Shown one piece after another: positions 8,032 to 56,843 of a stretch of 64,000 bases of DNA. Numbering within the stretch: the first letter of the stretch is position 1; each line of letters begins with the position of its first letter. Below the pieces are notes generated by a model, which did no database searches, was not told the DNA's origin, and worked only from the letters and a program-made list of their open reading frames with translations. The DNA is taken from NCBI GenBank assembly GCA_002269645.1, contig NIVC01001776.1, positions 337,990-401,989 of the forward strand, given 5' to 3'. Source of the DNA: Macrostomum lignano. Lineage: Eukaryota. The translations under genes and the position numbers were made by a program.

Positions 8032-11000
8032 ATGCAGCTCTGCCAGGTACTCCAGCCAGTGCTAATTATTCTAAATCTGGGAATCGCAACGCAGTCTTTT
8101 GACTTAGACTGCTCCATTAAAAAGCACAAAAGTGAGCATTTATTAACTTAAAAATATTTGACAATTGCCTTGTGTTTTGCTTTTAGTTTTTTTAAACGCT
8201 TCAATTTTAAACACTTCAAAAGACATTAAGTAATAAAACACTTCATTTTTATTAATGGCGTTAATTTCAGTCACACTGCAGCTGAGCAGGGCTGACGTTC
8301 TGCGCACCTGGCAACCCGGCGGTGCGCACTGCCGTTGGTGGGAGAGTCGGCAGTCAGAGACAAACCGATTCCCTGCTGCTGTGCGGTCCGGGCCTCGGTG
8401 GCTTGTGATGCAGCTGAGGCAGCCGATGATGCTGGAGGCGGTGAGCGTGCGAGACTGGGGTGAGTGACGCTGACCGACTCATTCTCATGATGCATGATGA
8501 GGCAGAGGGAGTCTGGGACACAGTGTGAGACAGTGTGAGACCAGCTAGCATCTAATTAGCACTCTGAGACAGTGTGAGACCAGCTAGCATCTAATTAGCT
8601 CTCTGAGACAGTGTGAGACCAGCTAGCATCTAATTAGCACTCTGAGACAGTGTGAGACCAGCTAGCATCTAATTAGCACTCTGAGACAGTGTGAGACCAG
8701 CTAGCATCTAATTAGCACTCTGAGACAGTGTGAGACCAGCTAGCATCTAATTAGCACTCTGAGACAGTGTGAGACCAGCTAGCATCTAATTAGCACTCTG
8801 AGACAGTGTGAGACCAGCTAGCATCTAATTAGCACTCTGAGACAGTGTGAGACCAGCTAGCATCTAATTAGCACTCTGAGACAGTGTGAGACCAGCTAGC
8901 ATCTAATTAGCACTCTGAGACAGTGTGAGACCAGCTAGCATCTAATTAGCACTCTGAGACAGTGTGAGACCAGCTAGCATCTAATTAGCACTCTGAGACA
9001 GTGTGAGACCAGCTAGCAGCCAAGCACTCGTGTTGCAGATCGCCAGTGGCACACAGCAGCTCCGGTCGGCTCGCCCGTGTCAGCGGTCGGAGCCTCGAGC
9101 CTCCCGCTGGAGCTGCAGCTGGAGGACCCGTGCCGCGCCAGCTGGGAGGCCTTCGGCAGTAGCGAATTTTGGATGCAGATTAGTAGCTCTAACCAGGTAC
9201 GTCATAACTATTTATATTTGAGGCTGGTTGTTTATGCGTGAGAATAGATTCTTAGCATGTTTGCCTTCTGTTTTTTCAGAAACCGATATCCTATATTCGT
9301 CTCGCAAGTGCAAAAGAGCTCAGCTTTTCTGCAATCAATATTTCTGGTAGGAAATGGTTTTTAATCTAGCGTATTTGAACTTTTTCAAAACTGAATATGT
9401 TATTTTGAAATTTCATCTTGATCCGGTCGAACGCACAGGCTACAAACCGACCTTGAAACTCGACCCACACGATGCAACAATGACACTTTTGAAACTGAAG
9501 GAGGCAAAAACTGTAACTTTCCATCTTATGGATTCAAGTTCAAGAGGTCTATCTGTTTCATGCTTTGTTCGTCGCAATCAATTGACTTTGAGGAGGGTTG
9601 TCGTTGTCAGAGAACGGGTAAGAACCTGTGTTTGTAGCTATTATGTGACTTGACTTTCTAGACTCAGCTGCAGGGGTTCTGGGCATTCGGATAGTCTAGA
9701 GAGTCCAGTAGGTGGATTGTCGCTCGCCCGGTAGCCCTTGGGTAGCGGACGAGCTGGCAGAGATTCTCGGGCCTGAAAACGTCTGAGAGGTGTCCGGGTT
9801 TGGGGCCAGAGGTTCACAAATTAAGGGCTTTGCATTCGCGACGCCAAAGAGGCGCATTTCCCGCTACGGATTTTCCCTGGAGGTGACAATGCTTAGCAAA
9901 ACTGACTCAAACCCACCCTGACCGCCCTGATGTCCCTGCGGTTGAGTCCAAGCAGGTAGCTATTGTGTGTCGAACTCGATGATACTAGAACTCATTAAGC
10001 CATTCTGAAAGCTAATCAGTTGATCGATCAAATCTATCCATTCACAGGCTTTTCCAGGAAGATTTTCGTTTAAGCTCAAGCCAATGATGAGGTGGCAAGG
10101 TTCTGAGCTAATCTGTTGCTATGGAAACCTGTCCAGTCCGGATCGTGGCAACTGTACTATTGTCAGGACAATCAGCGTGAAGTGTCAGTTTGAATTTTTC
10201 GTTCATTGTATTTCAAAATCGATTCAGTGATAGAAGAGAAACGATATTTTTCGGCCATTTTCAGTCGTGGCCAAGCGTACGGCACTGAGCGTGCCAAAGA
10301 AGTGGCTGGTCAACTCGTCTGTGCTGGTCAACTTCACCTCCGTTGAGGAGTATCCGCCTTCCAATCATTCTTGCGTTTTTAGATATGGAAATAATGGTGC
10401 CGGGGAACGCTTGGACCAAGTGAATGAGGTAATAATTAATGTTTTATTTATCTTTATTTACAATCTTTATTTCCTGGAAGCCCAAGGAAGTGACCTTTTA
10501 AGTCTTTCGTTTCAAGTTGACTTTGACTGGAAACTTTTGTGGAGCATTGCTACGAACGCCACTCACGAAGATTATGTAGACATCCATTTGAGCATTATTT
10601 ATATCAAAACTTTTCTTGAAACTGTTGGGATATTCAAAAACTATTCCTTTGGGAATGTAGGACCTAGACTACAAACCTAACGAATACAAACCTAAAGAAT
10701 ACAAACCTAAAGAATACAAACCTAAAGAATACAAACCTAAAGAATACAAACCTAAAGAATACAAACCTAAAGAATACAAACCTAAAGAATACAAACCTAA
10801 AGAATACAAACCTAAAGAATTCAAACCTAAAGAATACAAGCCTAAAGAATTCAAACCTAAAGAATTCAAACCTAAAGAATTCAAACCTAAAGAATACAAA
10901 CCTAAAGACTACAACCTAAAGAATACAAACCTAAAGACTACAACCTAAAGAATACAAACCTAAAGACTAAAAACCTAAAGACTACAAACCTAAAGACTAA

Positions 11001-14000
11001 AAACCTAAAGACTACAAACCTAAAGAATACAAACCTAAAGAATACAAACCTAAAGAATAAAAACCTAAAGACTACAAACCTAAAGACTAAAAACCTAAAG
11101 ACTACAAACCTAAAGACTACAAACCTTTAGAGACTACAGACCTAAAGTCTTCAAACCTAAAGACTACAAACTACTCTGAGTTATAATCCAATTGTAATAC
11201 AAATATAACGTTTTGAGTGTCTCACTTGTCATGATATCGTCTCCCCTTGCCCGATCCAGTCTGTCCGAGTGACTCTGTCCAGAACGGGCTTTCCTGCCTA
11301 CACCACCATCTCCCAGTTTCTGGTGAAGGCTGACCGATCAAAGCTTGGCGGCGAGTTGTACTGTCGCTCAACAATGAGTTGGTCAATTGCTACTCTGTAC
11401 AGAACGTTCCATGTTAGCCCTTCAACTATAGTTGGTGAGCTAGATTGCGCAACACTGTGTCATATTACATGCCAACTTGTTTACAGCTTGTCTTATTGAT
11501 GAAGCGAAGAAATTCCCTGCTCAAATTTCTAGAGCCCTGTCAGGCGAGCATAAGTTTCGGCTTGAGTTCCTACTGGCTTGAGGGCGGCATTGAGAACGTT
11601 ACACTCACATCGCCGAATTGCGGCGCAATTGGTCACTCGTGCGAACTTGTCCAGAATGATTTGACTGTTCTGTCCAAGCTCAATAGAACTTATGTACGTT
11701 TTAACGATATTATTCATTTACAACATTTTATTACATCATGTTTTAAATTTGAAGTATTTTTGCTCCTACAAATACATTTATGCTCCTACACTGTAGGTCA
11801 TCGGTGACACCAGCACGCATCAACTGCAAGTGAGGCATTGGATGAGGAATCACAGAAATTGGCAAATTGTCTGCCGTGCCAACCAATCAGATCTCCATAG
11901 CAACCGAGTTTTAAGCCAAACTACCCCAATTGTGTTTTGTGAGTCATCTTCACATTGCCACATTGTTGGATAAGTGGCAAATTATGTTGAAGCTCCAGGG
12001 GGGTTTCACAAAACTTAAAAAGCGACCTTGACTGAGATCAAATTAAGCTAGATCTCAAAGAGTTTTTCCCGAAAGACGTTCTGTGTGGTAAACCCCCCGC
12101 CTCTAATGTCGGTCATAACTTGAGGGCACATAAAGGGTAGAACTCTCAATATGAATTATGAAGCGCAGCAGTCGTATTTTTGCAACTTTTGTCAAAGCTC
12201 CACATTCAAAGCACTTGATTTTCAGACAAAGGCAACCTAACAATACAATCAGCATCCAACGCTCTGAAATGGTCAGTGCAGATTCAAGAAGGTCGGCCTC
12301 AAATGTCAAACGTGAGCTGCAGTCTCACCAATGTGAGTCAACCTTGCAGAAGCTCTGATTCTAGATCCATTTTCTAAGATGAACTAAAAAGGCAAACATC
12401 CCTGGTGGCTATCTTGCAGGTAACAACGATCTCGACGTCCATCAGAAGCTACTCGGCCACGGTGAAAATCGTCTGCGTTGGCCTGCAGATGAAAAATGGC
12501 GACAAAATATTTCAAGTGACAGCGATAAAAACTATCGGAGGCGAACAGAATGCCCATAATGCTATAATAAATCATATGGAAGCGGGGAAGGGTAAGTTTC
12601 AAGGACTAATGAAAAGTATATCAATGACTGCTGGATGATAGTCCGCTTCAACTCTTCAAAACTTCAAAACCGGACCTGATGCTTCAAATAAAGTAATAAA
12701 ATAATAATGATAATGATAGTAATATTCGCTTATCTCGTACACCTGTCTCAATCGGGCCAGATGTGCAACCGACAGCTCAGCCGCAGCTATTGCGCAGCGC
12801 ATCTGAAGGCTGCGTACGGCTGTTCAGTCCAAGGACTGGGGGGTCGCCACACTCACCCTCAATTACCCCAGCTAATGCTGGCACCCATTTTACAGCTGGG
12901 TAAACTGAAGCAATGCAGAGATAAGTGTCTTGCGCAAGGACGCCAATCGTTCCAAGTGGGTCGAGAATCGAACCCCCGACCTTTCAGTCGGTAGTCCGAC
13001 GCTCTAACCACTAGGCTAAAACCCCCTTGAATGGCACCCTAACACTGTTATCTGAGAACGACAAAATTCAGTGCGATTCTGCGCGAACTTTGAGATCCAG
13101 TCCTTAGAAATCTTCATTTTTTAGCCCAACGGACGGACCATTGTACTTGAAGGGGTTGTTATTGGATCTCGCGGCGTCTCTAAACAAAGTTATCAATTGC
13201 AGTTGCTTTAAGTCGAACTTCAAGCGATGATTCCCCGTAGGTCACTCGGAGCATTATGCCTTCGAAACCGTAATACTACTAGTGCGTGCGAGACCTAACA
13301 ACCTGTCCTAATTCCCTGGCACCCTAGTATGACGGCCCCTAAACCTTACAGCCTCCCCCAAAGCAAAAACCAAGACCCAACACTAATCCTAAATTTCGCT
13401 GAATAAAAATCAACAATTTCAGAAAACAGCTTAAGCCAAAACACGCCAACTACGTGCGATACTCTCCGTCTGGTTCTGTTCACCACTGTGGTCTGCGGTT
13501 TGCTCAGCGTGGCCTCCGTGATTGGCTGTGCCACCATTATGCTCCGGCGAGCTGCGGCAGTAGCGGCTGTGAGTCTGGTTTCCTGGAATTTGGTTGCGAA
13601 AATAATTATTCTTAGGAGGCAAGTAGGCACTCTGGCGCAAAACCTGATACTGGGGAGAAGCTACTAGGGAGAAGCTACTGGGGAGAAGCTACTGAGGAGA
13701 AGCTACTGGGGAGAAGCTACTGAGGACAAGCTACTGGGGAGAAGCTACTGAGGAGAAGCTACTGAGGAGAAGCTACTGGGGAGAAGCTACTGAGGAGAAT
13801 CTACTTAGGAGAAGCTACTGGGGAGAAGCTACTAGGGAGAAGCTACTGAGGAGAAGCTACTGAGGAGAAGCTAGTGAGGAGAAGCTATTGAGGAGAAGCT
13901 ACTGAGGAGAAGTTGCTGAAGAGAAGCTACTGAGGAGAAGCTACTGAGGAGAAGCTACTGGGGAGAAGCTACTGAGGAGAAGCTACTGAGGAGAAGCTAC

Positions 14001-16024
14001 TGAGGAGAAGCTACTGAGGAGAAGCTATTGAGGAGAAGCTACTGAGGAGAAGCTACTGAGGAGAAGCTACTGAGGAGAAGCTACTGAGGAGAAGCTAATA
14101 GAAGCGCCTACTGTGGGGAAAAGGTAGTCGAAGCGGTTACTGGAGGAAAGTTGGACGAAAAATGTCCGAATATTTTAATCAAAAGCATCAATGCAAACAA
14201 GCAAAACGCACTAAAGAGAAAGAAGTTCAGGCAAAACGCAAAAATAGACGAGTATAATTTGAAATATACGAGTAAAAGCATTTAACAAGATTTCATCGGA
14301 TGGCTATTTACAAGTGCGAGACAAATTAGTGATTTGTACAATATTTATTGTTTACCATTGATGCATGATAAATTCGGAAAGTAACTATTTTTCAGTAGTT
14401 GCTCGTACTTTAGCACTATAACAATAATTTTGGGTTAGTCACACCAGGAATGTTCACTTTGAATGTTAACTAAAGCAGAAGTTCGATCTACCTGTCAGTT
14501 CAAACAAAACTCCGTTACGTGGGCAGTAAATTTTCCGGTGTTTTGTCACATGATTTTACATAGAAATCCAAGCCAACGCAGCAATTCGTGTTGCATGATG
14601 CTGGCTTGCCTAAGATGGAACTTTCACTTTTGATTTAAATTTCGATTGCGGATAGTTTATAAGAATTCACCGACTCTTTAACTCGCTGTCATGTCTTGTC
14701 AGCTGACTTTGCGCTTCGTACTACGAGCTGCTATAGATAGTTTATTAGAGAGCTTGTTTTATTAGCATTTAAGGTTGTTTGTCTAATTTGTTTAGTTCGG
14801 TTGCTTATCCGGTTTCGCGAAGCAATAGTTGAAATCGTTTTTAACTTATCAAAAACATCTGTGGTCACTGCAGCATAGTATTACAGTTTGGTCTCAACCC
14901 GGTACTGAGCTGAGGTTACTGCCTCCCAAGTGTCTCAACCCGGTACTGAGCTAAGACCTCTGCCTCCCAAGTGTCTCAACCCGGTACTGAGCTGAGGTTA
15001 CTGCCTCCCAAGTGTCTCAACCCGGTACTGAGCTGAGGTTACTGCCTCCCAAGTGTCTCAACCCGGTACTGAGCTGAGGTTACTGCCTCCCAAGTGTCTC
15101 AACCCGGTACTGAGCTGAGGCTACTGCCTCCCAAGTGTCTCAACCCGGTACTGAGCTGAGGTTACTGCCTCCCAAGTGGCTCAACTCGGTACTGAGCTGA
15201 GGCTACTGCCTCCCAAGTGTCTCAACCCGGTACTGAGCTGAGGTTACTGCCTCCCAAGTGTCTCAACCCGGTACTAAGCTAAGACCTCTGCCTCCCAAGT
15301 GTCTCAACCCGGTACTGAGCTGAGGTTACTGCCTCCCAAGTGTCTCAACTCGGTACTGAGCTGAGGCTACTGCCTCCCAAGTGTCTCAACCCGGTACTGA
15401 GCTTAGACCTCTGCCTCCCAAGTTTCTCAACCCGGTACTGAGCTGAGGTTACTGCCTCCCAAGTGTCTCAACCCGGTACTGAGCTGAGGTTACTGCCTCC
15501 CAAGTGTCTCAACCCGGTACTGAGCTGAGGCTACTGCCTCCCAAGTGTCTCAACCCGGTACTAAGCTGAGGTTACTGCCTCCCAAGTGTCTCAACCCGGT
15601 ACTAAGCTAAGACCTCTGCCTCCCAAGTGTCTCAACCCGGTACTGAGCTGAGGTTACTGCCTCCCAAGTGTCTCAACCCGGTACTGAGCTGAGACCACTG
15701 CTACCCTTAACCCTTGTCAAGTGAATTAAAAGTTTCAATTCATTACAACCTTTGGGCGGCAGAGCCACAAATTAATAACTATCCGCTGCTGTCCAAACCT
15801 CACTCTTCTAGAAGAAAGTGTCAACAGCAAAAGCACTCGGTGGCTGCAGACAATGCCATTGTCTGGCAGGTACGGTCAGAGCCGGTCCGCGGAACCAAGT
15901 TCTGGCAGCGGCGGTTCCACCTTCGCTGCGAGCATCCCTCAAGACCTGCACTGACTACGAAGACCCGGATGTGTACAGCCAGATTGGCAGCTGCCTGAAG
16001 TCGCCGTACGTCAATTATCTTTGA
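8032..16024 (+). CDS. Receptor A: 14-exon type I membrane protein (~702 aa); signal peptide, discoidin/GBD-like domain, 4 Ig-like domains, TM, Tyr-motif tail
   Basis: Exons 8032-8131, 8271-8459, 9039-9196, 9280-9346, 9439-9617, 10048-10183, 10265-10428, 11260-11434, 11533-11693, 11797-11938, 12226-12332, 12420-12591, 13423-13568, 15812-16024. All GT-AG with consistent phases, total 2109 nt. [27 protein letters not shown]; tail ...[23 protein letters not shown]. Confidence 0.8.
8520..9017. repeat. 39-bp minisatellite GAGACAGTGTGAGACCAGCTAGCATCTAATTAGCACTCT in intron 2 of receptor A (~12 units)
   Basis: Directly visible. The same unit sits in intron 2 of all five paralogs. Confidence 0.95.
10670..11170. 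repeat. 15-bp minisatellite AAACCTAAAGA(A/C)TAC in intron 7 of receptor A
   Basis: Directly visible tandem array. Confidence 0.95.
12705..13025 (-). mobile_element. tRNA-derived SINE, family 1
   Basis: Reverse strand has A box TAGCCTAGTGGTTAGAGC, B box GGTTCGATTC, body CTTCAGTTTACCCAGCTGTAAAATGGGT and an (ATT)n tail. Homologous copies at 16571, 52476 and 55822. Confidence 0.85.
13646..14100. repeat. 14-bp minisatellite GAGGAGAAGCTACT in intron 13 of receptor A
   Basis: Directly visible tandem array. Confidence 0.95.
14890..15700. repeat. 41-bp minisatellite (AAGTGTCTCAACCCGGTACTGAGCTGAGGTTACTGCCTCCC), about 20 units, in intron 13 of receptor A
   Basis: TGTCTC recurs at 14931, 14972, 15013 (period 41). 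Confidence 0.95.
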
Positions 16025-17718: not shown

Positions 17719-20700
17719 ATGATGACTAAAGGTTTAGGAACAATTTTGTTATTAATGGCTTTATGGAAAGCTGAGGCTTTTGGCACTAAAAAATTCGGTA
17801 AGAATTTCGAATACGAGTAGCTTACCGAAAATGCAGTATCTGATGCTCATCTGTACAAGTTGTGAAGTCTTCGTTTCAGTGTCAGTGCTGCTGCGCAGGA
17901 CTGACGTTCTGCGCACCTGGCAACCCAGCGGTGCGCACTGTCGTTGGTGGGAGAGTCGGCAGTCAGAGACAAACCGATCCCCTGTTGCTGTGCGGTCCGG
18001 GCCTCGGTGGCTTGTGATGCAGCTGAGGCAGCCGATGCTGCTGCAGGTGGTGAGCGTGCGAGACTGGGGTAAGTGACGCTGACCGACTCATTCTCATGAA
18101 GCATGATGAGGCAGAGGGAGTTTGGGACACAGAGTGTGAGAGAGTGTGAGACCAGCTAGCATCTAATTAGCACTCTGAGACAGTGTGAGACCAGCTAGCA
18201 TCTAATTAGCACTCTGAGACAGTGTGAGACCAGCTAGCATCTAATTAGCACTCTGAGACAGTGTGAGACCAGCTAGTATCTAATTAGCACTCTGAGACAG
18301 TGTGAGACCAGCTAGTATCTAATTAGCACTCTGAGACAGTGTGAGACCAGCTAGTATCTAATTAGCACTCTGAGACAGTGTGAGACCAGCTAGCATCTAA
18401 TTAGCACTCTGAGACAGTGTGAGACCAGCTAGTATCTAATTAGCACTCTGAGACAGTGTGAGACCAGCTAGCATCTAATTAGCACTCTGAGACAGTGTGA
18501 GACCAGCTAGCATCTAATTAGCACTCTGAGACAGTGTGAGACCAGCTAGCATCTAATTAGCACTCTGAGACAGTGTGAGACCAGCTAGCATCTAATTAGC
18601 ACTCTGAGACAGTGTGAGACCAGCTAGCATCTAATTAGCACTCTGAGACAGTGTGAGACCAGCTAGCATCTAATTAGCACTCTGAGACAGTGTGAGACCA
18701 GCTAGCATCTAATTAGCACTCTGAGACAGTGTGAGACCAGCTAGCATCTAATTAGCACTCTGAGACAGTGTGAGACCAGCTAGCATCTAATTAGCACTCT
18801 GAGACAGTGTGAGACCAGCTAGCATCTAATTAGCACTCTGAGACAGTGTGAGACCAGCTAGCATCTAATTAGCACTCTGAGACAGTGTGAGACCAGCTAG
18901 CATCTAATTAGCACTCTGAGACTGTGTGAGACCAGCTAGCATCTAATTAGCACTCTGAGACAGTGTGAGACCAGCTAGCATCTAATTAGCACTCTGAGAC
19001 AGTGTGAGACCAGCTAGCATCTAATTAGCACTCTGAGACAGTGTGAGACCAGCTAGCATCTAATTAGCACTCTGAGACAGTGTGAGACCAGCTAGCATCT
19101 AATTAGCACTCTGAGACAGTGTGAGACCAGCTAGCATCTAATTAGCACTCTGAGACAGTGTGAGACCAGCTAGCATCTAATTAGCACTCTGAGACAGTGT
19201 GAGACCAGCTAGCATCTAATTAGCACTCTGAGACAGTGTGAGACCAGCTAGCATCTAATTAGCACTCTGAGACAGTGTGAGACCAGCTAGCATCTAATTA
19301 GCACTCTGAGACAGTGTGAGACCAGCTAGCATCTAATTAGCACTCTGAGACAGTGTGAGACCAGCTAGCATCTAATTAGCACTCTGAGACAGTGTGAGAC
19401 CAGCTAGCATCTAATTAGCACTCTGAGACAGTGTGAGACCAGCTAGCAGCCAAGCACTCGTGTTGCAGATGGCCAGTGGCACGCAGCAGCTCCGGTCGGC
19501 TCGCCCGTGTCAGCGGTCGGAGCCTCGAGCCTCCCGCTGGAGCTGCAGCTGGAGGATCCGTGCCGCGCGAGCTGGGAGGCCTTGAACGGTAGCGAATTTT
19601 GGATGCAATTTAATAGCTCTAACGAGGTACGTCATAACTATTTATATTTGAGGCTGGTTGTTTATGCGTTACTCGTAGAATAGATTTTTAGCATGTTTGC
19701 CTTCTTGTTTTTTTCAGAAACCGATATCCTATATTCGTCTGTCAAGTTCAAAAGAGCTTAGCTTTTCTCTAATCTGTATTTACGGTAGGAAAATAATTTT
19801 TAATCTAAGCGTATTTGAACTTTTAAAAAACTGAATATGTTATTTTGAAATTTCATCTTGATCCGGTCGAACGCACAGGCTACAAACCGACCTTGAAACT
19901 CGACCCACACGATGCAACAATGACACTCTTGAAACTGAAGGAGGCAAAAACTGTAACTTTCCATCTTATGGATTTAAGTTCAAGAGTTCAATCTGTTTCA
20001 TGCTTTGTTTGTCGCAATCAATTGACTTTGAGGAGGGTTGTCGTTGTCAGAGAACGGGTAAGAACCTGTGTTTGTAGCTATTATGTGACTTGACTTTCTA
20101 GACTCAGCTGCAGGGGTTCCGGGCATCGAGATACTCTGGAGAGTCCAGGCAGGAGGTGGATGGTCGCTCGCCCGGTAGCCCTTGGGTAGTGGACGAGCTG
20201 GCAAAGATTCTCGGGCCTGAAAACGTCTGAGAGGTGTCCGGGTTTGGGGCCAGAGGTTCACAAATTAAGGGCTTTGCATTCGCGACGCCAAAGAGGCGCA
20301 TTTCCCGCTACGGATTTTCCCTGGAGGTGACAATGCTTAGCAAAACTGACTCAAACCCACCCTGACCGCCCTGATGTCCCTGCGGTTGAGTCCAAGCAGG
20401 TAGCTATTGTGTGTCGAACTCGATGATACTAGAACTCATTAAGCCATTCTGAAAGCTAATCAGTTCATCGATCAAATCTATCCAGTCACAGGCTTTTCCT
20501 AGAAGATTTTCGTTTAAGCTCAAGCCAATGATGAGGTGGCAAGGTTCTGAGCTAATCTGTTGCTATGGAAACCTGTCCAGTCCGGATCGTGGCAACTGTC
20601 CCATTGTCAGGACAATTGGCGTGAAGTGTCAGTTTGAATTTTTCTTTTATTGTGTTTCAAAAGTGCATCAGTGATAGAAGAGAAACTGCATTTTTCGGCC

Positions 20701-26700: not shown

Positions 26701-27089
26701 GTTCATGCATACTCCATAGATCAAATTTCATAATGCATATTTCCTTAATGCTTCGACTATGAAATTGCGATTTTTAATTTATCCTTTATACATGGAATGA
26801 ATCCTGTAAGCTTGCAAAATTTCAGCCACAGAGAGGTCACACTGGACTGCGAAGTCAGCACAATGCAGGTCAGGCCGTCCCAATGCGAATACGGAACAAC
26901 TTCGCAGTGCAAAATGACTCACACGGCAGCAGTGAATACGACTATCCAACAACCGAGCAGCCAGGAAGCTGCCAAAATGAACAGTTGGGTCAAGAAGGTG
27001 CCTACACACAGGTGCTGCTGGTTCCTTTACAACAGGGACCACTGAATGAAGGTCGGGTTTACGTCAACCAGACTGAAAATGCTACTTGA
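17719..27089 (+). CDS. Receptor B: 14-exon type I membrane protein (~723 aa), mosaic of A-like and C-like exons
   Basis: Exons 17719-17797, 17880-18068, 19469-19626, 19718-19784, 19879-20057, 20492-20627, 20811-20965, 21151-21331, 21578-21744, 21830-21974, 22050-22168, 23528-23720, 26472-26611, 26826-27089; total 2172 nt, open. Signal MMTKGLGTILLLMALWKAEA; TM FFSLLLASILASLVVGFLLSTIY; tail has EYDYP, AYTQV, VYVNQ. Confidence 0.8.
18140..19447. repeat. 39-bp minisatellite in intron 2 of receptor B (~33 units)
   Basis: Same unit as 8520-9017. Confidence 0.95.
21390..21560. repeat. 15-bp minisatellite CCCTCACCCAGCCAC in intron 8 of receptor B
   Basis: Same unit and position as in receptor C (38025-38385). 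Confidence 0.95.
22310..23105. repeat. 21-bp minisatellite GACTAGAGAACCCAGGTGATT in intron 11 of receptor B
   Basis: Directly visible tandem array. Confidence 0.95.
23956..26190. mobile_element. piggyBac-derived fold-back element in intron 12 of receptor B
   Basis: Decayed transposase DKLYGIRRLWDTF...PYLCVDESLV...EKPG...NITCDRFFSS...LGTV on + (about 24770-25400). TTAA at 23952-23955 and 26191-26194. Long inverted arms about 24110-24700 vs 25440-26010. Confidence 0.8.
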
Positions 27090-44777: not shown

Positions 44778-44876
<99 letters not shown>

Positions 44877-44933: not shown

Positions 44934-44967
<34 letters not shown>

Positions 44968-44985
44968 CGTAGATAGATAGATAGG

Positions 44986-45076
<91 letters not shown>

Positions 45077-46923: not shown

Positions 46924-49900
46924 ATGAAGGATTTTTACAAAATTTTGCTGTGGCTGCTGCTCTGCAACACGAAATTCACCGCCGGCAACTCAGACTGCTC
47001 CTCCACGCGCCAAGCCGGTGAGGCAAGCGAAATTGAAATGCATATCAACTCCAGCTAACAGGAAGACTGAAAGTAAGCAGTGTCTACTACATTTTCCAGT
47101 GACAGTGCAGCTGAGCAGGGCTGACGTTCTGCGCACCTGGCAACCCAGCGGTGCGAACTGCCGTTGGTGGGAGAGTCGGCAGTCAGAGACAAACCGATTC
47201 CCTGCTGCTGTGCGGTCCGGGCCTCGGTGGCTTGTGATGCAGCTGAGGCAGCCGATGATGCTGGAGGCGGTGAGCGTACGAGACTGGGGTGAGTGACGCT
47301 GACCGACTCATTCTCATGATGCATGATGAGGCAGAGGGAGTCTGGAACACACAGTGTGAGACAGTGTGAGACCAGCTAGCATCTAATTAGCTCTCTGAGA
47401 CAGTGTCAGACCAGCTAGCATCTAATTAGCACTCTGAGACAGTGTGAGACCAGCTAGCATCTAATTAGCACTCTGAGACAGTGTGAGACCAGCTAGCATC
47501 TAATTAGCACTCTGAGACAGTGGGAGACCAGCTAGCAGCCAAGCACTCTGAGACAGTGTGAGACCAGCTAGCAGCCAAGCACTCGTGTTGCAGATGGCCA
47601 GTGGCTCGCAGCAGCTCCGGTCGGCTCGCCCGAGTCAGCGGTCGGAGCCTCGAGCCTCCCGCTGGAGCTGCAGCTGGAGGATCCGTGCCGCGCCAGCTGG
47701 GAGGCCTTCGGCAGCAGCGACCGCTGGAGGCAGATTGGGGTGAACGGAGTAGATCAAGTAAGCTGCTTCATTTAAACTATCTTAGCCTAATAATGCAATT
47801 AATAAATCCATCCATTTTACACTTCAGCCCGTAGTTCGTTTCCTTGTGCTAAGTAGCTTGAGAACTGCTGGACTGAGCTGGAGGGCCGTCTCATTAACAG
47901 GTCTCTGAGAAATTTTGAAATTTTGAAGCAATCACTAAATCATAGCTTATTGTGAATTAAGTGCTTTAGAAGCAGGTGCATTTTTTCTTGTAGGGCGCTT
48001 TCTACCGCTGAGCCTCACGGTAACTGACAACCGTTTTTGCCCTCTGAGAGACCTGTCCGCCTTGCACGATGGAGTTGAAGCCTGCTTCTCTGTTTCAAGA
48101 TGTACCAGCGGATCGATTCGATGCTTCTTTAACCTAAGCAATGGCGCAACTCTGGAGCCGAGACTGGTCTGCTCAACTCTTCTTTATAGCGAGCTATCAA
48201 TACTTCTTCTTGCACTGACTTCATACAAAATTCGCTTTTTCAGCTACGAAGCCAAAAGCAGCAAGCTGAATACGAATTTCTGGCTGCACGGAGCACTGCT
48301 CATTTGTCTTCTGTCTGATCGCCCAGGGATTCGAATCGAGCAGACCATTGGAATCGTTGGTGAGAAAGAAGTGTCTGCCTGAGTTAAAAAATGTATTATA
48401 AGTCCGCTTTGAAGATTACAAAGCGAAACATGCACTTTTCAGTCACACCAAGTGTTGAACTGTCGTTATCAACCGTGTGGGTGATTGGTCGCAGAGCCAA
48501 GGTGCACTTTGTCTCAAGCCCGGCTTATCCTCCTCAGCAGCACAGGTGCCAAATTATCTCTGGCAGCAGCACCTGGGAACTGACTGAGTATTCTAGCAAG
48601 GTTAGTATAGTATTACATTACTGTTGAACTCGCTAATGCGTTGCTGATTCGTCTATAGTTTTCCATGATATATAATGTATTTAAACTTTCAGATGAGACA
48701 AGTTTACGTCAGGAACAGCATCAACATGTCGCTAACTGAAGTGAAGTCTGAATTTGTAGTCACAGTCACGTCAGCCATGCTGAATGGCACCGTGAGATGC
48801 AGTAGCAACCATAAAAGTACAAGTCAAGAAGTCAAGAAGGATATCGTTATTTCAAGCATCAGCGGTAAGTGCTTGCATTAGAGAATCTCCTATACGCCCG
48901 ATTGGAAGAGCCATAAAGATCTCCTCATTTCAGAGCCTTGCAGAACTGCCATTCGTGTAGACAACATCCAGTACTCGTATCAGGTTGTACAAGTGACGTC
49001 ACTGAGATGCAGCATTTGGAATGTTCAGCACAGCTGCTGGCTTGTCAAGCCCAAAGAAGATATCACACAGCGTCTAATTAAGCTATCTGTACGATTTTTG
49101 CTATTGTAATAATTCTTATTATTCAGAATTTACTGCAACAATATCTGATCTCTTCTATTGCAGCAAGACGGCTTCAGCAGCACTCACAGGTTGAATATTA
49201 TGAAACAAGAGCAGAAAACAGACTGGCTAGTGAGATGCAGCGTTAATCAGTCGGGAGTGACGTACCCGGATGTGGAAACTGAGTTAGCAAGCGATGATGA
49301 CAGTGAGTCAAGATTTAAAGGTTTTTTTACCACTTTAATCTACACTGCACGTTGCTGCGTTTATATTATTAACGAGCTTATACAGCTTGTATTCGTTAGT
49401 ATTCTGTTTATCGTCATTTGTGCGACTTTTGGTAGCACTTGGGTAGCGAGTAGGCCATCTAAACTGGCCAGTCCACTGACATCTTAAACAACTATCCTTA
49501 ATCGTAAAATTGTCAGGAATTGCATTGTGTAACTCTTGCGAGCCTAAGGGTTCGATGTGTAACTAACTCTGCCACTTACTAACCCCACTTTCTTCAGCTT
49601 TCTACTATCAGTGGGGACTGAGTTGCATAATTTTGCTGATTTTATCTGCCCTCGGCCTCATCCTGAGCTGCATGATTATTCGAAGAATTCGCCGCGCTAA
49701 ATCAGCAAAGCCAAACTCGACTTCAAGTAGAAGTTCGACATTCCCAGGACGACGTACCCTCCTCTCGAGTGCGGCCACCTCGCCGCAGGCACAGGTAGGG
49801 CTAGCCACAGATTTAGTTTGTACATTAGGGCACGCATGTAAGTGTCAAATACTGGTGTTTTGATGAAGAATAGCTTTAAACTAAAAGAAAATTCTAGCTA

Positions 49901-51126
49901 CCATGGGTTGTCTTGGCTATTCGCTCAAGCACTTTTGCTACTGGCTTTTGCCTGAAAGTGAAGCTCTTTCTTAGAATAGCCTGGACACAGATTGCCTGGT
50001 AAATAGCGCTGCTTATCTGATCAGAATTCAGGTGTGCACAGAAGCACAGTTCTAATTTGAACTTCTCTCAGCCTGAACCGCGATATACCTAAGTCCATGT
50101 GACTGTAAAATTCAGCAGTGAATTCCGATGCATCTAATACCAGCTTTTCAGAGCTAGATCCACTTTTGTTTCGTTAAAAGTTTAATTCCCATTCTAAATA
50201 GTAATACAGAAGAGATATTCTGTTGAGTTTGTGAAATGAATTGCGATCGCTTTCACTCAAGCGTGCTATGGCCTGTACGAGTATTCTATGAAGCCGTAGC
50301 CCATTGGTCAATCATGGATGAATAAAACCTTTGGTCTAGTGCGGCGCTCTGATGTTCCAACATTGGTCCAGGCTCGATTCCAAGTGCAGTCACTAATTTG
50401 GGGCTAAATTGGAATCTCGGCTTGGCTCTGCTCATGCAATTAATGACCCTGAGGGTCAATCCCCAAGGCACAGTGAAGTGTACATGTCTAACGATAGATA
50501 AAGTTAGGGCCGCTGTGCATTCCTGTGTGAGTGTGTGCCTGTGCGTTTGACTGCGTACGTATCCGTGCGTTTGTGTGCCTGCAGCTCAGGGGAGTCGGCG
50601 CAATGGGCAGCAATGCCTCTCGCCGGTTGTGTGACAATGTCGCCTAAAGTGCACCAGGGTGCACACAGGTCCCTGCCTGCAACTAGAACTACCCCTGTAT
50701 TCCATAGCCCCATGCAGAATCATGAGCAGGCTGAACTGCTAAAAAGACAACAAATGACTTGGTATGCTCAAAGTAATCTCTTAACATTCTCGTCTTTAAG
50801 GCCTACTAAAGTATCACCTTAAAATACTTCGAAAGAAACGACTCTGAATAACATTTATCAATTGTTTCCACCCTCAGCGACCGGCACCACAGCCCAATCA
50901 TCATCAGTTCAGTTCCTCGCAGTCAGTGAGCAGAGGCGGTCCACCACCTGCAGAAAGCAGCAGCCGCGGCAATGAAAACGAGCCAACCAGCAGTCAAGAG
51001 ACCGACCCAGTCTACGAAGAAGTGTCTTTGTGTGTCTACAGGCCGGTGCACCCGCTGCCGCGGTACCCACGGCAGTTCTCAGAAAAACATTGTCGACGCG
51101 CCCACGACTCCAGTCGGTTTGATTGA
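46924..51126 (+). CDS. Receptor D: 12-exon paralog with only 3 Ig-like domains; 11-nt deletion in exon 6 (possible pseudogene)
   Basis: Exons 46924-47017, 47100-47288, 47594-47757, 47828-47900, 47994-48166, 48244-48359 (116 nt vs 127 in E), 48443-48600, 48693-48864, 48934-49088, 49164-49302, 49598-49794, 50878-51126. Signal MKDFYKILLWLLLCNTKFTAG; TM WGLSCIILLILSALGLILSCMII; tail PVYEEVSLCVYRPV. Confidence 0.72.
47350..47575. repeat. 39-bp minisatellite in intron 2 of receptor D (~5-6 units)
   Basis: Same unit as in A and B. Confidence 0.95.
50291..50690 (+). mobile_element. tRNA-derived SINE, family 2
   Basis: GCCGTAGCCCATTGG...GGCTCGATTCC head; body homologous to the two minus-strand copies. 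Confidence 0.75.
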
Positions 51127-52790: not shown

Positions 52791-53954
52791 TACATACATA
52801 TAGTTGTACGTAGTATCAACTGTTATCTGAAGACTCGATCATAGCAACTGAAATTTTTCGAGTTTTTTCAACTCGGTTGTGCACTGCATTGCAGATAACA
52901 TCCATCTACTCGTATTCTAGTATCGTCTAAAGCTTTCAATATACCACAATAGAAAATGCGTATGTAATTTTCATCTTTTTGAACGTAAATTGGTTCAGAG
53001 ACAACCTCAAAGTCGTATAGTAGAATTTTTTTAAATTCAAGATGCCATCAAGCTTGATTGTACAGCAGCGTTAGGTTTAGGTAATTTAAGCGCTTAACTC
53101 GTTTCTGCGGAATCTGAACTTAGATTACTACATTATAGTGGTCCCTGAAGAACTTGGAAGACCGTATTCTCAAATAAAAACCTTCTCTGACGCACCTGCA
53201 ATTGGCTCCAATACTGTCGGACAGCGCAACGGCGATTTTAATCAAATTTAAGACCACAACAGAAATGTGGCGTCTCTCGTCAAAGCGTACAACCAGAGAT
53301 TCAGTTTCGTCTCTCCTGCCTCGATGCTGCTTCCGGATGAATGGTTGTTTAACACTCTGTGCCAATCTGTGTCACAAACAGAAGCATCTGTTAAAACAAG
53401 AAACACTGAACTTCGCTAGCTCCAGGTAAATTTAAGGCTCGAAAAACTTCTACAACTACAAAATATTAACAGCTGAAAAACATAATCCAACAAGCCAATT
53501 TGCTCAACAAGAAGCGAAAACGAATACCAGATGAATAACGATCTTGAATTCATTCTGCTGCTGTTGCTGAGCTCAAAACTTGCATGCAATGCTCTGGTCT
53601 GCACTGATGCAAGTCACAAGGGTCAGTCGAGTTACTCACTGCCTTTTGAGACTTTTCTTCATGCCTCATCCGAGTAAAACTAAGCGAATCTTTGGGGATG
53701 AATATTTCAGTGACAGTGCAGCTGAGCAGGGCTGACGTTCTGCGCACCTGGCAACCCAGCGGTGCGCACTGCTGTTGGTGGGAGAGTCGGCAGTCAGAGA
53801 CAAACCTCTGCTGCTGTGCGGTCCGGGCCTCGGTGGCTTGTGATGCAGCTGAGGCAGCCGATGATGCTGGAGGCGGTGAGCGTACGAGACTGGGGTGAGT
53901 GACGCTGACCGACTCATTCTCATGATGCATGATGAGGCAGAGGGAGTCTGGGAC

Positions 53955-54258
53955 ACAGAGTGTGAGACAATGTGAGACCAGCTAGCATCTAATTAGCACT
54001 CTGAGACAGTGTGAGACCAGCTAGCATCCAATTAGCACTCTGAGACAGTGTGAGACCAGCTAGCATTTAATTAGCACTCTGAGACAGTGTGAGACCAGCT
54101 AGCATCTAATTAGCACTCTGAGACAGTGTGAGACCAGCTAGCATCTAATTAGCACTCTGAGACAGTGTGAGACCAGCTAGCATCTAATTAGCACTCTGAG
54201 ACAGTGTGAGACCAGCTAGCATCTAATTAGCACTCTGAGACAGTGTGAGACCAGCTAG
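53955..54258. repeat. 39-bp minisatellite in intron 2 of receptor E (~8 units)
   Basis: Same unit as in A and B. Confidence 0.95.
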
Positions 54259-55821
54259 CAGCCAAGCACTCGTGTTGCAGATGGCCAGTGGCACACAGCA
54301 GCTCCGGTCGGCTCGCCCGTGTCAGCGGTCGGAGCCTCGAGCCTCCCGCTGGAGCTGCAGCTGGAGGATCCGTGCCGCGCCAGCTGGGAGGCCTTCGGCA
54401 GCAGCGACCGGTGGAGGCACCTCGGAAGAGCTTGCAATGAAGTAGCAACGTTTGCCTTGAACCTGTAGTGTACCTATGCATGATCGGATTATATATTGAA
54501 AGTAAAAAGCAAGTGCTTTTTTCTGCTCCAGAGCACAGTCCGGTACATACTGGTCAGGAGCTGGACGAATGTTCCGCTAAGTTGGAGTGCCATGAAACTG
54601 TCAGGTCTTTATTAAAATATTTACAGTCTGCCTACTTCTAACTGATGCGTTGATTTTTAAAACAATCGTGTGACAGGACGTGACGATTTTTTAGGTCCTG
54701 TTGCTCCACTGAACCTCACCGTGATGAACAGTTCCCAATGTCCGCTTAAAAACTTGCAACTCATGAAGGCTGGGGACTTGGCGTGCCTCACAGTTTCGAG
54801 CTGTCTTGACGGCTCGCTTGGCTGTCTATTGAAGTATAGCAACGGGTTAACTCATCAACTGAGACAGGTGCGTTCATCTTTTTAAATAGATTTCGAATTG
54901 TGTGGAGCTTTGCAAAATTTTCTTATAAAACTCTCCACCACGGCAGCTGACCAGCCAGGCACAGCCTGCCGTGTTCGAACTCAGAGCCACCTCGACAATG
55001 CACGATGCGACACTCAGCTGCTTTCTGACAGACCGACCTGCTGAGCGCATTGAGTAGACTATTGGGATTTTATGTGAGAGAATTTTAATGAGAATGGGTT
55101 TTCTGGAAGCTGATATTGCATTTACTTCATCATGCTTATGTTTCAGTTCGCCCTGCCCACCTGTCAGTATCGGTGTCACCCGTGTGGGTCAGCGGCAGCA
55201 GCGTCACTGTGAATGTCACATCAGCTCCGACTTACCCAGCACTGCATCACAGCTGCAGCATCAGTTCTGCCAGCTCTGAGTGGCGTCTGGATGAAATTCG
55301 CACAAATGTGAGATGAACTCATGACTTCTCTTTCTACAGGACACTCCTGTGAGATCAGGTGTGCCTGACAGTTCTACTCTACTGTTGCTCATTGTTGACC
55401 TTCAAACAACTTCCAGGTAAAAACGGCTGTCGCAAAAGATGACAAAAATCAGGCCTTTGTGGTCGTGGCGTCTCAGTTCAGATTCCAGGTCAGCGCCGCG
55501 ATGCTGAACGGCACGTTGGAATGCGAGGGCAGGTTTGGAGTCCCAGCGAGGGAACACGTTGCAGTGCAGACCAATGAGCGCTTTTTCATATCAGCAATAA
55601 GTGGTGAGCTTTTTCCGAAAATCGTTTCCATTGTTGAATCTGTAAATTCCATTGTTGAATTGCATTTTTGTTTGCAATTCAGCTTTCTAATTTCGAACCA
55701 TTTGATTCCCTGTCTGCCTACATAAGATTCGAACTCCAAATATTTTCAAACTGCTTTTTAATCCCTGAAGAACTGGGACAGTTGACAGATATTATTGGGT
55801 CAATCGTACATTCCAAATGTC

Positions 55822-56125
55822 CGGGTTTGTAGCCTAGTGTTTAGAGCATCGGAATCACAACTTGAAGAACGGGGGTTCAATTCTCGATCACACTGGAACA
55901 ATTTGTATCCTTGAGCAAGACACTTAACTCTGCATTACTTCAGTTCACCCAGCTGTAAAATGGGTGCCAGCATTAGCTGGGGTAATTGAGGGTGTGTGGC
56001 GACCCCCCAGTCCTTGGACTAAACAGCCGTACGCAGCCTTCAGACTCGCCGCGCAATAGCTGCGGCTGAGCTGTCGGTTGCACATCTGCCTGTTAGGGCA
56101 AGGTGTACTCAATTATTATTATTAC
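55822..56125 (+). mobile_element. tRNA-derived SINE family 1 in intron 8 of receptor E
   Basis: A/B-box head and (ATT)n tail; homologous to 52476-52790. Confidence 0.85.
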
Positions 56126-56843
56126 ATTCCAAGCAAAATGCTAATCGCTGCAGAGCCCTGCTTGACGGTCATCCACCTGATCAGTGTCCACCATCGATGG
56201 CTCAAAGTCAGAGTGACGTCACAGCAGTGCAGCGTATGGAATGTCAGCCACAACTGCTGGCTAACCGAAGTCGGTGGAGGTGCAACGGCCCGCAGTAGTA
56301 GGTAAAAAGACGCCTACAGACCCAGAGCACTTTTTAAATAGCAGTTTTAAGGGTCTAGAGGGGGGACACGGGGGGTAAATAAAAAAACACATCTAAACAC
56401 CCTTAACACATCTAATCACCCATAAACACATCTAATCACCCTTAATACCAAAAAGCAATATAACCCACCCCCAACACCCCCAACACTCCCCCTCGTGTCC
56501 CCCCTCTGGAACCTTATAAACGGCCATTAAAAAAGGTCTGATCTGTAAGCGTCGTTTTACCTACTACTACACAACCCAACACTCCCCAACACTTCTAACA
56601 CTTCCAAATCTCTATAACCCCTCGCACGCGCCGCAGGCGCGAAGGGTCTTTTTCTGTAGTATGAAACTTCATACTAGCCCATTCATGAAGAGGAGGCATA
56701 ATACCATATATGGCAGCGAGAGTTTCATTCATAAGTTATAAATCGTCTCTTTTTCTTATACCACCCACTGTTCTATTATTCTACCCCAACCTATTGTGCT
56801 TCCACTTCGTCTCTTTTTTCTGTTACTAAAAATAGAACAAAAA

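What the first reader, a model, noticed from the sequence alone, without database searches (positions are those of the whole stretch)
8032..56293. Tandem cluster of five divergent Ig-like, Tyr-motif receptors: candidate undescribed immune/allorecognition-type locus
None of these genes appears as a long ORF. Spliced by hand, five paralogs share one exon-phase blueprint: signal exon (L/S)DCS, a discoidin/GBD-like domain over exons 2-4 ([11 protein letters not shown]...VSVRD; ends [10 protein letters not shown] / LSWRAVSLTG), paired 1-0-1 exons for each Ig-like domain, then in A-D a TM exon and a tail exon. Ectodomains are highly diverged outside exons 2-3, and the cluster shows chimerism, domain loss and pseudogenes. 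This birth-and-death pattern recalls Hydractinia Alr, vertebrate paired receptors and snail resistance-locus TM genes (analogy only). An expanded nephrin/Kirrel-like adhesion family is the main alternative.
Basis: partly seen in the sequence, partly recalled or inferred. Interest (0 to 1): 0.92.

Follow-up and report, generated by a model that had tools for sequence, protein, structure and literature searches.

The report
Flatworm-specific Ig-like receptor gene cluster
The window holds five tandem copies, two or three of them broken, of a Macrostomum lignano-only family of membrane receptors with Ig-like domains, whose first domain is kept almost identical in every copy by gene conversion; the genes are real, but an immune or allorecognition role is not shown.

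Summary
The window is Macrostomum lignano contig NIVC01001776.1. It carries five + strand paralogs, A to E, with one exon-phase blueprint and GT-AG at every junction. The layout is a signal exon, a roughly 140-aa N-terminal domain on exons 2-4, Ig-like domains each split 1-0-1 over two exons, a TM exon and a tail exon. Gene A (14 exons, 702 aa) is 698/702 identical to the transcript-derived NCBI model BOX15_Mlig025426g1. B is an A/C chimera. C has lost half of exon 3 in frame. D carries an 11-nt frameshift in Ig1. E is a pseudogene with a 5-bp deletion, a stop codon and a Maverick-like insertion.

AlphaFold plus Foldseek support Ig folds. The "discoidin-like" N-domain is not confirmed: there is no Pfam hit and pLDDT is about 30. 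An exhaustive HMM search found 38 relatives, and all but one weak metagenome hit are M. lignano. No orthology to nephrin/Kirrel was found.

The most unusual feature is that exon 2, intron 2 (with a 39-bp minisatellite) and most of exon 3 are 88-100% identical as DNA in four copies (C has lost the exon-3 part). Between distant copies the other exons cannot be aligned as DNA. This points to gene conversion.

An immune or allorecognition function is untested. It is also disfavoured, because the membrane-distal domain is the constant part. This is an undescribed variant of a known kind of locus, of moderate interest.

The parts
8032..16024 (+). Gene A, apparently intact, 702 aa. Exons: 8032-8131, 8271-8459, 9039-9196, 9280-9346, 9439-9617, 10048-10183, 10265-10428, 11260-11434, 11533-11693, 11797-11938, 12226-12332, 12420-12591, 13423-13568 (TM), 15812-16024 (tail). 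Layout: signal peptide, N-domain, 4 Ig-like domains, TM, 78-aa tail with DYEDP, YSQI and YVNY.
   Evidence: all junctions are GT-AG and the model is 698/702 identical to P0011 (BOX15_Mlig025426g1). TM and tail motifs.
17719..27089 (+). Gene B, a chimera of about 710 aa. Exons: 17719-17797, 17880-18068, 19469-19626, 19718-19784, 19879-20057, 20492-20627, 20811-20965, 21151-21331, 21578-21744, 21830-21974, 22050-22168, 23528-23720, 26472-26582 (TM), 26836-27089 (tail). The last four exons are less certain. There is no DCS motif in exon 1.
   Evidence: 8526-10291 matches 18956-20735 at 95.6%, and 20748-22143 matches 37349-38964 at 80-95%.
20735..20748 (+). Recombination breakpoint of chimera B. 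A-like sequence ends inside the remnant of the A-type Ig2a exon, and C-like intron and Ig2a sequence begins.
35945..40134 (+). Gene C, 736-aa open frame. Exons: 35945-36032, 36109-36297, 36519-36604 (truncated exon 3), 36707-36779, 36923-37095, 37174-37363, 37412-37566, 37794-37980, 38399-38565, 38651-38795, 38871-38989, 39079-39331, 39435-39544 (TM), 39859-40134 (tail with AYDYP and the ITIM-like SVYLVL).
36507..36519 (+). Deletion in gene C. The normal exon-3 acceptor and the first ~24 codons of exon 3 are replaced by the end of the minisatellite. A cryptic phase-1 acceptor at 36519 keeps the frame.
46924..51126 (+). Gene D, about 651 aa if exon 5 is read through. Exons: 46924-47017, 47100-47288, 47594-47757, 47828-47900, 47994-48359 (Ig1), 48443-48600, 48693-48864, 48934-49088, 49164-49302, 49598-49794 (TM), 50878-51126 (tail with PVYEEV and CVYRPV). 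It has only three Ig-like domains.
   Evidence: Exons 1-3 and the tail are 98-100% identical to P0005.
48280..48283 (+). Site of an 11-nt deficit in D's second Ig1 half, relative to paralog models P0001/P0004/P0008. Canonical splicing (donor 48167, acceptor 48244) would give a premature stop. The frame stays open only if the 77-nt intron is retained.
   Evidence: This is an inference from the sequence.
53531..56293 (+). Gene E, a pseudogene that is cut by the window. It comprises exon 1 from 53531, exon 2 at 53711-53894, exon 3 from 54281, exon 4 at ~54490-54606, Ig1 at ~54700-55072, Ig2 at ~55150-55605 and Ig3a at ~56170-56293. Its next exon lies outside the window (L001 76092-76313).
53805..53806 (+). 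5-bp deletion (CGATT) in exon 2 of E, causing a frameshift.
55055..55057 (+). In-frame stop codon in the second Ig1 half of E (..AERIE*TIGIL; paralogs have Q).
8264..9181 (+). Homogenised block in copy A: exon 2, all of intron 2 and most of exon 3. The equivalent blocks are 17874-19611 (B), 36102-36507 (C, truncated), 47091-47736 (D) and 53702-54426 (E).
   Evidence: exon 2 is 92-98% identical, the intron 5' part 93-100% and exon 3 86-92% (A, B, D, E), while the 100 nt upstream are 44-66%; block dS is about 0.05.
8526..9018 (+). 39-bp minisatellite (TGAGACAGTGTGAGACCAGCTAGCATCTAATTAGCACTC) in intron 2 of A, 12.6 units. Also 18137-19448 (33.6 units), 36366-36507 (~3.6), 47357-47573 (5.6) and 53963-54260 (7.6).
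   Evidence: It is also present in family genes on two other contigs.

Best explanation
This is part of a larger tandem array of a Macrostomum lignano-restricted family of type I membrane proteins of the immunoglobulin superfamily.

Each intact gene encodes, in order:
- a signal peptide;
- a roughly 140-aa beta-rich N-terminal cap domain of unassigned fold;
- three or four Ig-like domains;
- one uncharged TM helix;
- a 78-130-aa cytoplasmic tail whose tyrosines sit in acidic Y-[DE]-x-P, YxN, YEEV or ITIM-like contexts.

I take the proteins to be cell-surface receptors or adhesion receptors. On this reading the cap engages a common partner, and engagement is relayed by tyrosine phosphorylation of the tail to SH2 adaptors. 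This functional step is inferred, not shown.

What is shown is how the locus evolves:
- Repeated tandem duplication.
- Unequal or ectopic recombination that made the A/C chimera B.
- Decay of copies. E is dead, D is very probably dead, and C is damaged in the cap.
- Ongoing gene conversion that keeps one DNA tract nearly identical in all copies. The tract covers exon 2, intron 2 with its 39-bp minisatellite, and most of exon 3. The rest of the genes has drifted to 25-40% protein identity.

The minisatellite inside the tract is a plausible initiator of the conversion, but this is also inferred.
For: Gene structures and phases. Gene A agrees with a model derived from RNA-seq (annotation method in PMC5730564).

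Ig fold: AlphaFold gives pLDDT 70-84 for residues 280-470 of P0011, with an all-beta pattern and a TM helix at 597-633. Foldseek hits to multi-Ig ectodomains reach E 4.5e-9 with probability 1.0. Distant paralogs reach Pfam C2-set_2 at about its threshold.

TM segments and tyrosine motifs.

Taxonomic restriction: the word-index searches returned 27, 32 and 14 hits, all M. lignano. The exhaustive profile search of 1.84 billion representatives gave 38 hits. Every one is named as M. lignano except one weak metagenome protein (E 3.7e-5).

Conversion:
- Identity of the block is 92-98% in exon 2, 93-100% in the intron and 86-92% in exon 3 (A, B, D, E). The 100 nt upstream are at 44-66%.
- dS in the block is about 0.05 for A-D and A-C, although only 2 of 14 (A-D) and 1 of 14 (A-C) exons can be found by blastn between those genes.
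- The same minisatellite lies in intron 2 of a family gene on contig NIVC01000958.1, and is also present near the family gene on NIVC01001089.1.
- Family members with a diverged cap exist (P0041/P0065 and P0047). Near-identity is therefore not an intrinsic need of the fold.

Chimera and decay.
Against: No expression, localisation, ligand or phosphorylation data exist for any member, so the receptor function is an inference from architecture alone.

The cap has no confident fold (pLDDT 30-34) and no family match.

Tyrosine content of the tails (3-5 per 80-120 aa) is not above average, and only C has a consensus ITIM. There is no ITAM and no charged TM residue.

dN/dS of 0.3-1.5 on few substitutions, together with two or three damaged copies out of five, is also compatible with much of the array being under weak constraint.

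M. lignano is a recent polyploid with a redundant assembly (PMC5730564). Some 'paralogs' on other contigs may therefore be homeologues or haplotypes.
Confidence: 0.7

Rival explanations
1. An immune or allorecognition receptor locus. On this view the diversified Ig ectodomains recognise microbes or non-self tissue. The different tails (ITIM-like in C, YxN in A and B) would give inhibitory and activating outputs, as in vertebrate paired receptors.
For: - Tandem array with birth-and-death dynamics.
- Restriction to one lineage.
- Non-homologous tails behind a shared ectodomain cap, one with a consensus ITIM.
- Homogenisation of the N-terminal part by conversion, which is known for Siglec-11/16 and Siglec-5/14 (PMC5701461, PMC4042635).
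Against: - The membrane-distal domain is the invariant part. In Alr, KIR or FREP-type systems, as I recall them, the distal domain carries the variation.
- There is no ITAM, and no charged TM residue for an adaptor.
- There is no clear excess of nonsynonymous change.
- No polymorphism or expression data exist.
- As far as I know, no allorecognition phenomenon is known in this solitary worm.
Confidence: 0.12
2. An expanded family of cell-adhesion or neuronal or epithelial recognition molecules, functionally like nephrin/Kirrel, nectins or Dpr/DIP. The Ig domains would mediate homophilic or heterophilic contacts, and the tail would link to the cytoskeleton.
For: - The best structural matches include ICAM-5, SYG-2 (nephrin), SYG-1/Rst (Kirrel), nectin-1 and Necl-4.
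- Acidic YDxP/YDxV-like motifs recall, from my own knowledge, the Nck-binding tyrosines of nephrin.
Against: - There is no sequence homology to those families, no FN3 domain, and a non-Ig N-terminal cap.
- Foldseek matches are generic for tandem Ig domains, and immune receptors score equally well.
- In my understanding, conserved adhesion families do not normally show 2-3 broken copies in 5.
Confidence: 0.25
3. Gamete or mating-related recognition proteins. Reproduction-related genes evolve fast in Macrostomum, a hermaphrodite genus studied for sexual selection, and could generate such a lineage-specific, rapidly turning-over array.
For: - Rapid evolution of reproduction-related genes in Macrostomum is documented (PMC7336406, title and abstract).
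- The family is species- or genus-restricted and divergent.
Against: - There is no expression evidence.
- The gene identifiers were not found in the supplements of the two papers searched. One re-analyses germline and neoblast transcriptional signatures; the other is a differential-expression study under ploidy change.
Confidence: 0.08
4. Largely decaying duplicates. The array would be a by-product of segmental duplication in a repeat-rich neopolyploid genome. One or two functional genes would be surrounded by non-functional copies, and the similarity in exons 2-3 would be maintained passively by conversion.
For: - E is dead, D is frameshifted, C is deleted in the cap and A' is partial.
- Omega in the converted block is 0.5-1.5.
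- Transposons fill the introns.
- The assembly is known to be redundant.
Against: - A, B and C keep 700-aa reading frames across 14 exons with intact splice sites.
- Several family members on other contigs have transcript-derived full-length models (P0007, P0012, P0016, P0065).
Confidence: 0.2

Closest known systems
Vertebrate multigene IgSF receptor clusters with paired members (Siglec-5/14, Siglec-11/16, CEACAM, LILR/PirB, KIR)
   Same: - Tandem arrays of type I membrane proteins with several Ig-like domains.
- Birth-and-death turnover with pseudogenes and chimeras.
- Gene conversion that keeps the N-terminal ligand-binding part alike while the tails differ (PMC5701461, PMC4042635, PMC2832619).
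- PirB/LILRB3 and SIRP-gamma are among the structural matches.
- Gene C has an ITIM-like SVYLVL motif.
   Different: - No sequence homology.
- The N-terminal domain is not an Ig V-set domain but an unassigned ~140-aa domain.
- No member has a charged TM residue or an ITAM, so no activating/inhibitory pairing is evident.
- The conversion tract includes a whole intron with a minisatellite and is shared by dozens of paralogs rather than by a pair.
Nephrin/Kirrel (SYG-2/SYG-1) and nectin-type adhesion IgSF
   Same: Single-pass proteins with tandem Ig domains and tyrosine-containing tails. They give the top Foldseek matches.
   Different: - HMMER and Pfam detect no relationship.
- No FN3 domain is present.
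- There is an extra N-terminal cap.
- The family is restricted to one species rather than conserved one-to-one across bilaterians.
Hydractinia Alr1/Alr2 allorecognition complex and snail FREP or resistance-locus genes
   Same: Invertebrate clusters of divergent IgSF membrane or secreted genes with pseudogenes and chimeric members (from my own knowledge; analogy only).
   Different: There, as I recall, variation concentrates in the membrane-distal domain and is allelic. Here the distal domain is the constant part, and allelic variation is unknown. No homology was found.
Discoidin (F5/8 type C) or other galactose-binding-domain-like modules
   Same: By eye, W-L-x-x-x-L...V-S-V and a C-terminal hydrophobic strand pair resemble the discoidin/F-lectin pattern. 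Partial beta-strand prediction agrees.
   Different: - No Pfam hit even at E 10.
- No PDB profile hit.
- No confident model and no fold match.
- A true F5/8 type C domain scored 7.6e-12 with the same tool, in the neighbouring Maverick ORF.

Membership tests
Immunoglobulin superfamily (Ig-like beta-sandwich domains) | Ig-like fold of the repeated ~100-aa domains | tested here: met
   AlphaFold model of P0011 (gene A, 698/702 identical): domains 2-3 have pLDDT 70-84 and are all-beta. Foldseek against PDB gave 1354 matches at E<=0.001, the top being ICAM-5 D1-D4, SYG-2, PirB and nectin. Domains 1 and 4 are of lower confidence (35-67).
Immunoglobulin superfamily (Ig-like beta-sandwich domains) | Match to Pfam Ig-family HMMs | tested here: not met
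   No Ig family hit for P0011, P0007, P0016, P0002 or P0024 at E<=1. Only distant M. lignano relatives reach C2-set_2 or C2-set_3 at about threshold.
Discoidin / F5_F8_type_C (galactose-binding-domain-like) | Sequence match to the family profile | tested here: not met
   hmmscan of three N-domains at E<=10 gave 0 families. The PDB profile search gave nothing relevant.
Discoidin / F5_F8_type_C (galactose-binding-domain-like) | Jelly-roll beta-sandwich fold | tested here: inconclusive
   pLDDT was about 30 in the full-length model and 34.4 in the domain-only model, with 7 strands predicted. Foldseek gave no hit with E<1.
Nephrin/Kirrel adhesion family | Detectable orthology or sequence homology, and FN3 domain (nephrin) | tested here: not met
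   The profile search of 1.84 billion representatives returned only M. lignano family members plus one weak metagenome hit. No FN3 or I-set Pfam hit was found.
Paired activating/inhibitory immune receptors | ITIM in the tail of inhibitory members | tested here: inconclusive
   A consensus [SIVL]xYxx[ILV] motif occurs only in C (SVYLVL) and in the distant relative P0047 (VVYAQV). A, B and D have none.
Paired activating/inhibitory immune receptors | Activating members with a short tail and a charged TM residue, or an ITAM | tested here: not met
   The TM segments of A-D are uncharged, all tails are 78-120 aa, and no YxxL/I(6-12)YxxL/I motif is present.
Paired activating/inhibitory immune receptors | Ectodomain similarity maintained by gene conversion | tested here: met
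   The block from exon 2 through intron 2 to exon 3 is 86-100% identical, including the intron. Flanks are at 44-66%. Block dS is about 0.05.
Allorecognition loci (Alr-type) | High allelic polymorphism concentrated in the distal domain; a fusion/rejection phenotype | not testable with these tools
   Only one assembly is available. Between paralogs, the distal domain is the least variable part.

The most novel reading that the evidence does not exclude
A flatworm-specific surface-receptor system in which one ligand-binding N-terminal cap of a new fold is kept identical across some 30 or more paralogs. The mechanism would be minisatellite-driven gene conversion of a tract covering exon 2, intron 2 and exon 3. 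Ig stalks and signalling tails (ITIM-like, YxN, YxxP) would diversify freely. This would be an invertebrate, many-membered analogue of paired receptors, used for immune or self/non-self sensing.
Probability: 0.12. Interest if true: 0.8.

Novelty: new variant of a known kind. Interest (0 to 1): 0.45.

Why it matters
Lineage-specific Ig-superfamily receptor arrays are the raw material of immune, allorecognition and cell-recognition systems, and to my knowledge almost nothing is known about them in flatworms. This locus gives a clean, annotatable example in a transgenic, RNAi-amenable model. It has intact, chimeric and dead copies side by side, and a sharply bounded conversion tract that contains a minisatellite. 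That makes it useful for two things: studying how conversion and divergence partition within one gene, and as a starting point for asking what the constant cap binds. It also corrects the public annotation. The NCBI model for gene A is stitched across 77 kb from two copies.

Tried and rejected
- Pfam on full-length proteins and on the isolated N-domain found nothing.
- PDB sequence and profile searches found nothing.
- A second AlphaFold job on the N-domain alone, using an alignment that included the diverged caps of P0041 and P0047, gave pLDDT 34. Its Foldseek search was empty. The GBD-like idea could therefore be neither confirmed nor excluded.
- The UniRef names of hits (SHR-BD, Vitellogenin, RHD, 'F5/8 type C', 'NPHN' and others) were checked and rejected as evidence. 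P0044 and P0040 have no such Pfam domain.
- Splitting D's Ig1 into two exons like its paralogs gives a premature stop. I kept the read-through exon only as the sole open frame and flagged D as probably dead.
- Literature and supplement searches for the gene identifiers, or for a described Macrostomum Ig family, found nothing.
- I considered that the conserved block might be a mobile cassette or an assembly artefact, and rejected both. Its start coincides with the exon-2 acceptor, and exon 4 is homologous but diverged in all copies. The five copies in one contig differ by 2-14% across the block's exons.
- dN/dS was computed but rests on too few substitutions to claim positive selection.
Full report
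**Source.** The window is eukaryotic. Every protein hit is from the free-living flatworm Macrostomum lignano. The window is 100% identical to NIVC01001776.1 (assembly Mlig_3_7, GCA_002269645.1), positions 337,990-401,989.

**Observation.** A six-frame scan finds the peptide ..[16 protein letters not shown].. five times on the + strand. A DNA self-comparison shows three things:
- A tract starting about 6 nt before exon 2 and ending about 15-30 nt before the end of exon 3 is shared by four copies at 94-96%. C matches at about 90-92% and only up to the minisatellite.
- 8526-10291 equals 18956-20735 at 95.6%.
- 20748-22143 equals 37349-38964 at 80-95%.

**Gene models.** I used the M. lignano proteins as guides and required GT-AG and an open frame.

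- **Gene A** (8032-16024) has 14 exons and encodes 702 aa. It is 698/702 identical to P0011, which is BOX15_Mlig025426g1. That annotation comes from a genome-guided RNA-seq assembly (PMC5730564), so A's junctions have indirect transcript support. The four mismatches arise because the NCBI model spans 77 kb. It takes its last three exons from a partial copy, A', that lies beyond the window.
The signal exon ends in phase 1, exon 2 is 1->1, exon 3 is 1->0 and exon 4 is 0->1. Four exon pairs of 1->0 and 0->1 follow, then the TM exon (1->0) and the tail exon.
- **Gene B** (17719-27089) can be spliced to about 710 aa. Its first six exons are A-like and its Ig2-Ig4a exons are C-like. The switch at 20735-20748 lies inside the remnant of an A-type Ig2a exon, so B is a recombinant. 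A degenerate piggyBac-type element with 560-bp inverted repeats lies in the long intron before B's TM exon.
- **Gene C** (35945-40134) keeps a 736-aa frame. However, the acceptor and the first ~24 codons of exon 3 are gone and are replaced by the end of the minisatellite. Only a cryptic acceptor at 36519 saves the frame.
- **Gene D** (46924-51126) has three Ig-like domains, a TM exon and a tail. Compared with the paralog models P0001, P0004 and P0008, its second Ig1 half lacks 11 nt. Canonical splicing would therefore hit a stop, and the frame is open only with the 77-nt intron retained. D is probably a pseudogene.
- **Gene E** (from 53531) has three lesions: a 5-bp deletion in exon 2, a stop at 55055-55057, and an AT-rich element of about 17 kb after its Ig3a exon (ending at 56293). 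Its next exon lies at L001 76092-76313, outside the window.

The array continues beyond the window with A' (L001 80.2-87.2 kb) and a further C-like gene from L001 89.3 kb. Another contig also carries two family genes in tandem.

**What the proteins are.**
- Pfam finds nothing in five family proteins, and a phmmer search of P0011 against PDB sequences finds nothing.
- An AlphaFold model of P0011 with a 17-sequence alignment is poor overall (pLDDT 49.5). It is confident (70-84) and all-beta for residues 280-470, and it has a TM helix at 597-633.
- Foldseek places the model among multi-Ig ectodomains: ICAM-5 D1-D4, SYG-2, PirB/LILRB3, nectin-1, Necl-4 and SIRP-gamma, with E down to 4.5e-9.
- More distant M. 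lignano relatives touch the Pfam C2-set models.

The Ig assignment therefore stands.

The N-terminal domain does not yield:
- pLDDT is about 30 in the full model and 34 in a dedicated run that included diverged caps.
- Foldseek finds no match.
- Pfam finds no hit at E 10.
- The PDB profile search finds no relevant hit.

Its resemblance to discoidin or F-lectin motifs is an impression only.

All of A-D have an uncharged TM segment and a 78-120-aa tail. The tail tyrosines sit in these contexts:
- DYEDP, YSQI and YVNY in A;
- EYDYP, YTQV and YVNQ in B;
- AYDYP and SVYLVL in C;
- YEEV and YRPV in D.

A Y-[DE]-x-P motif recurs in otherwise unalignable tails, including those of P0007, P0017 and P0028. 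There is one consensus ITIM and no ITAM.

**Distribution.** Three word-index searches and one exhaustive profile search of 1.84 billion representatives gave only M. lignano proteins, apart from a weak 1712-aa metagenome hit. No one-to-one orthology to a conserved family exists in these data. No paper found here mentions the genes.

**The unusual feature.**
- Among the five copies, exon 2 is 92-98% identical. The unique 5' part of intron 2 is 93-100% identical. Exon 3 is 86-92% identical in A, B, D and E. The 100 nt upstream of exon 2 are at random level, 44-66%.
- Synonymous divergence in the block is about 0.05 between A and D, or A and C. These are gene pairs in which blastn finds only 2 or 1 of 14 exons.
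- Across the family the same peptide is nearly invariant, while the rest is 25-40% identical.
- Intron 2 always holds a 39-bp minisatellite of 3.6 to 33.6 units. The same minisatellite occurs in intron 2 of a family gene on a second contig and near a family gene on a third.
- Members with a diverged cap exist (P0065/P0041 and P0047).

The simplest reading is recurrent gene conversion of a bounded tract, possibly seeded by the minisatellite, and not merely protein-level constraint. Omega within the block is 0.5-1.5, on few changes.

**Interpretation.** What is shown is a lineage-restricted IgSF membrane-protein array that evolves by duplication, recombination, conversion and decay. What is inferred is receptor signalling through phosphotyrosine. 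The immune or allorecognition reading is not excluded, but it has no direct support. The constant distal domain argues against an Alr-like logic. It fits better with a shared ligand or partner, as in Siglec pairs homogenised by conversion (PMC5701461, PMC4042635), although the charged-TM/ITAM hallmark of paired receptors is missing. Adhesion or wiring, reproductive recognition, and largely decaying duplicates remain open rivals. Expression data would separate them.

**Verdict.** The functional headline is speculative and the fold of the first domain is unverified. I rate novelty as a new variant of a known kind, and interest at 0.45.

Noticed in passing
window 56700-64000, continuing to L001 ~75500: A roughly 17-kb AT-rich (26-37% GC) Maverick/Polinton-like element sits inside an intron of pseudogene E. 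It has long intronless ORFs with protein-primed family-B polymerase motifs read by eye (58335-60722 and 60787-62295, split by a stop or frameshift; Pfam sees only an Endonuclease VII insert). Outside the window it carries a Pox_A32-type packaging ATPase, an rve integrase and an ORF with a genuine F5/8 type C domain.
   Followed up: partly
window 24097-26014: A degenerate piggyBac-type transposon (PF13843 hit at 24753-25157), flanked by ~560-bp inverted repeats (24097-24681 and 25453-26014), lies in the long intron before gene B's TM exon.
   Followed up: partly
window 1024-2829: Mariner/Tc1-type transposase remnants (PF01359 in 1453-2178) with an internal 125-bp duplication. A 40-bp minisatellite lies at 19-538.
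   Followed up: partly
window 12737-13024 (+), 16571-16795 (+), 52470-52778 (-), 55823-56124 (-): A roughly 290-bp dispersed repeat (79-88% identical, SINE-like) is present in introns or flanks of A, D and E. The copy at 55823-56124 lies just upstream of E's Ig3a exon.
   Followed up: no
L001 10001-87216 (window 8032 onward): The NCBI gene model BOX15_Mlig025426g1 spans 77 kb. It joins exons 1-11 of gene A to the last three exons of a partial downstream copy (A', L001 80.2-87.2 kb), skipping genes B-E. This is an annotation artefact of mapping a transcript onto near-identical paralogs.
   Followed up: yes
window 21395-21560 and 38028-38383; 39586-39843; 10666-11171; 13648-14097; 14891-15693; 22310-23104: Introns of the family genes are packed with micro- and minisatellites (15-bp CACCCCTCACCCAGC-type arrays, (AGTC)n, and 14-, 15-, 21- and 41-bp arrays). 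These create long spurious ORFs such as PSPSHPSPSH or VSQSVSQS in the ORF list.
   Followed up: no
window 5132-6241 (-) and 7012-7561: A 369-aa ORF on the minus strand has no Pfam match. A 25-bp tandem array lies upstream of gene A. Nature unknown.
   Followed up: no
L003 4543-4917: The family's 39-bp intron-2 minisatellite also occurs about 5 kb upstream of the P0007 gene on contig NIVC01001089.1, where tblastn saw no exon 2. This may be a relic of another decayed copy.
   Followed up: no
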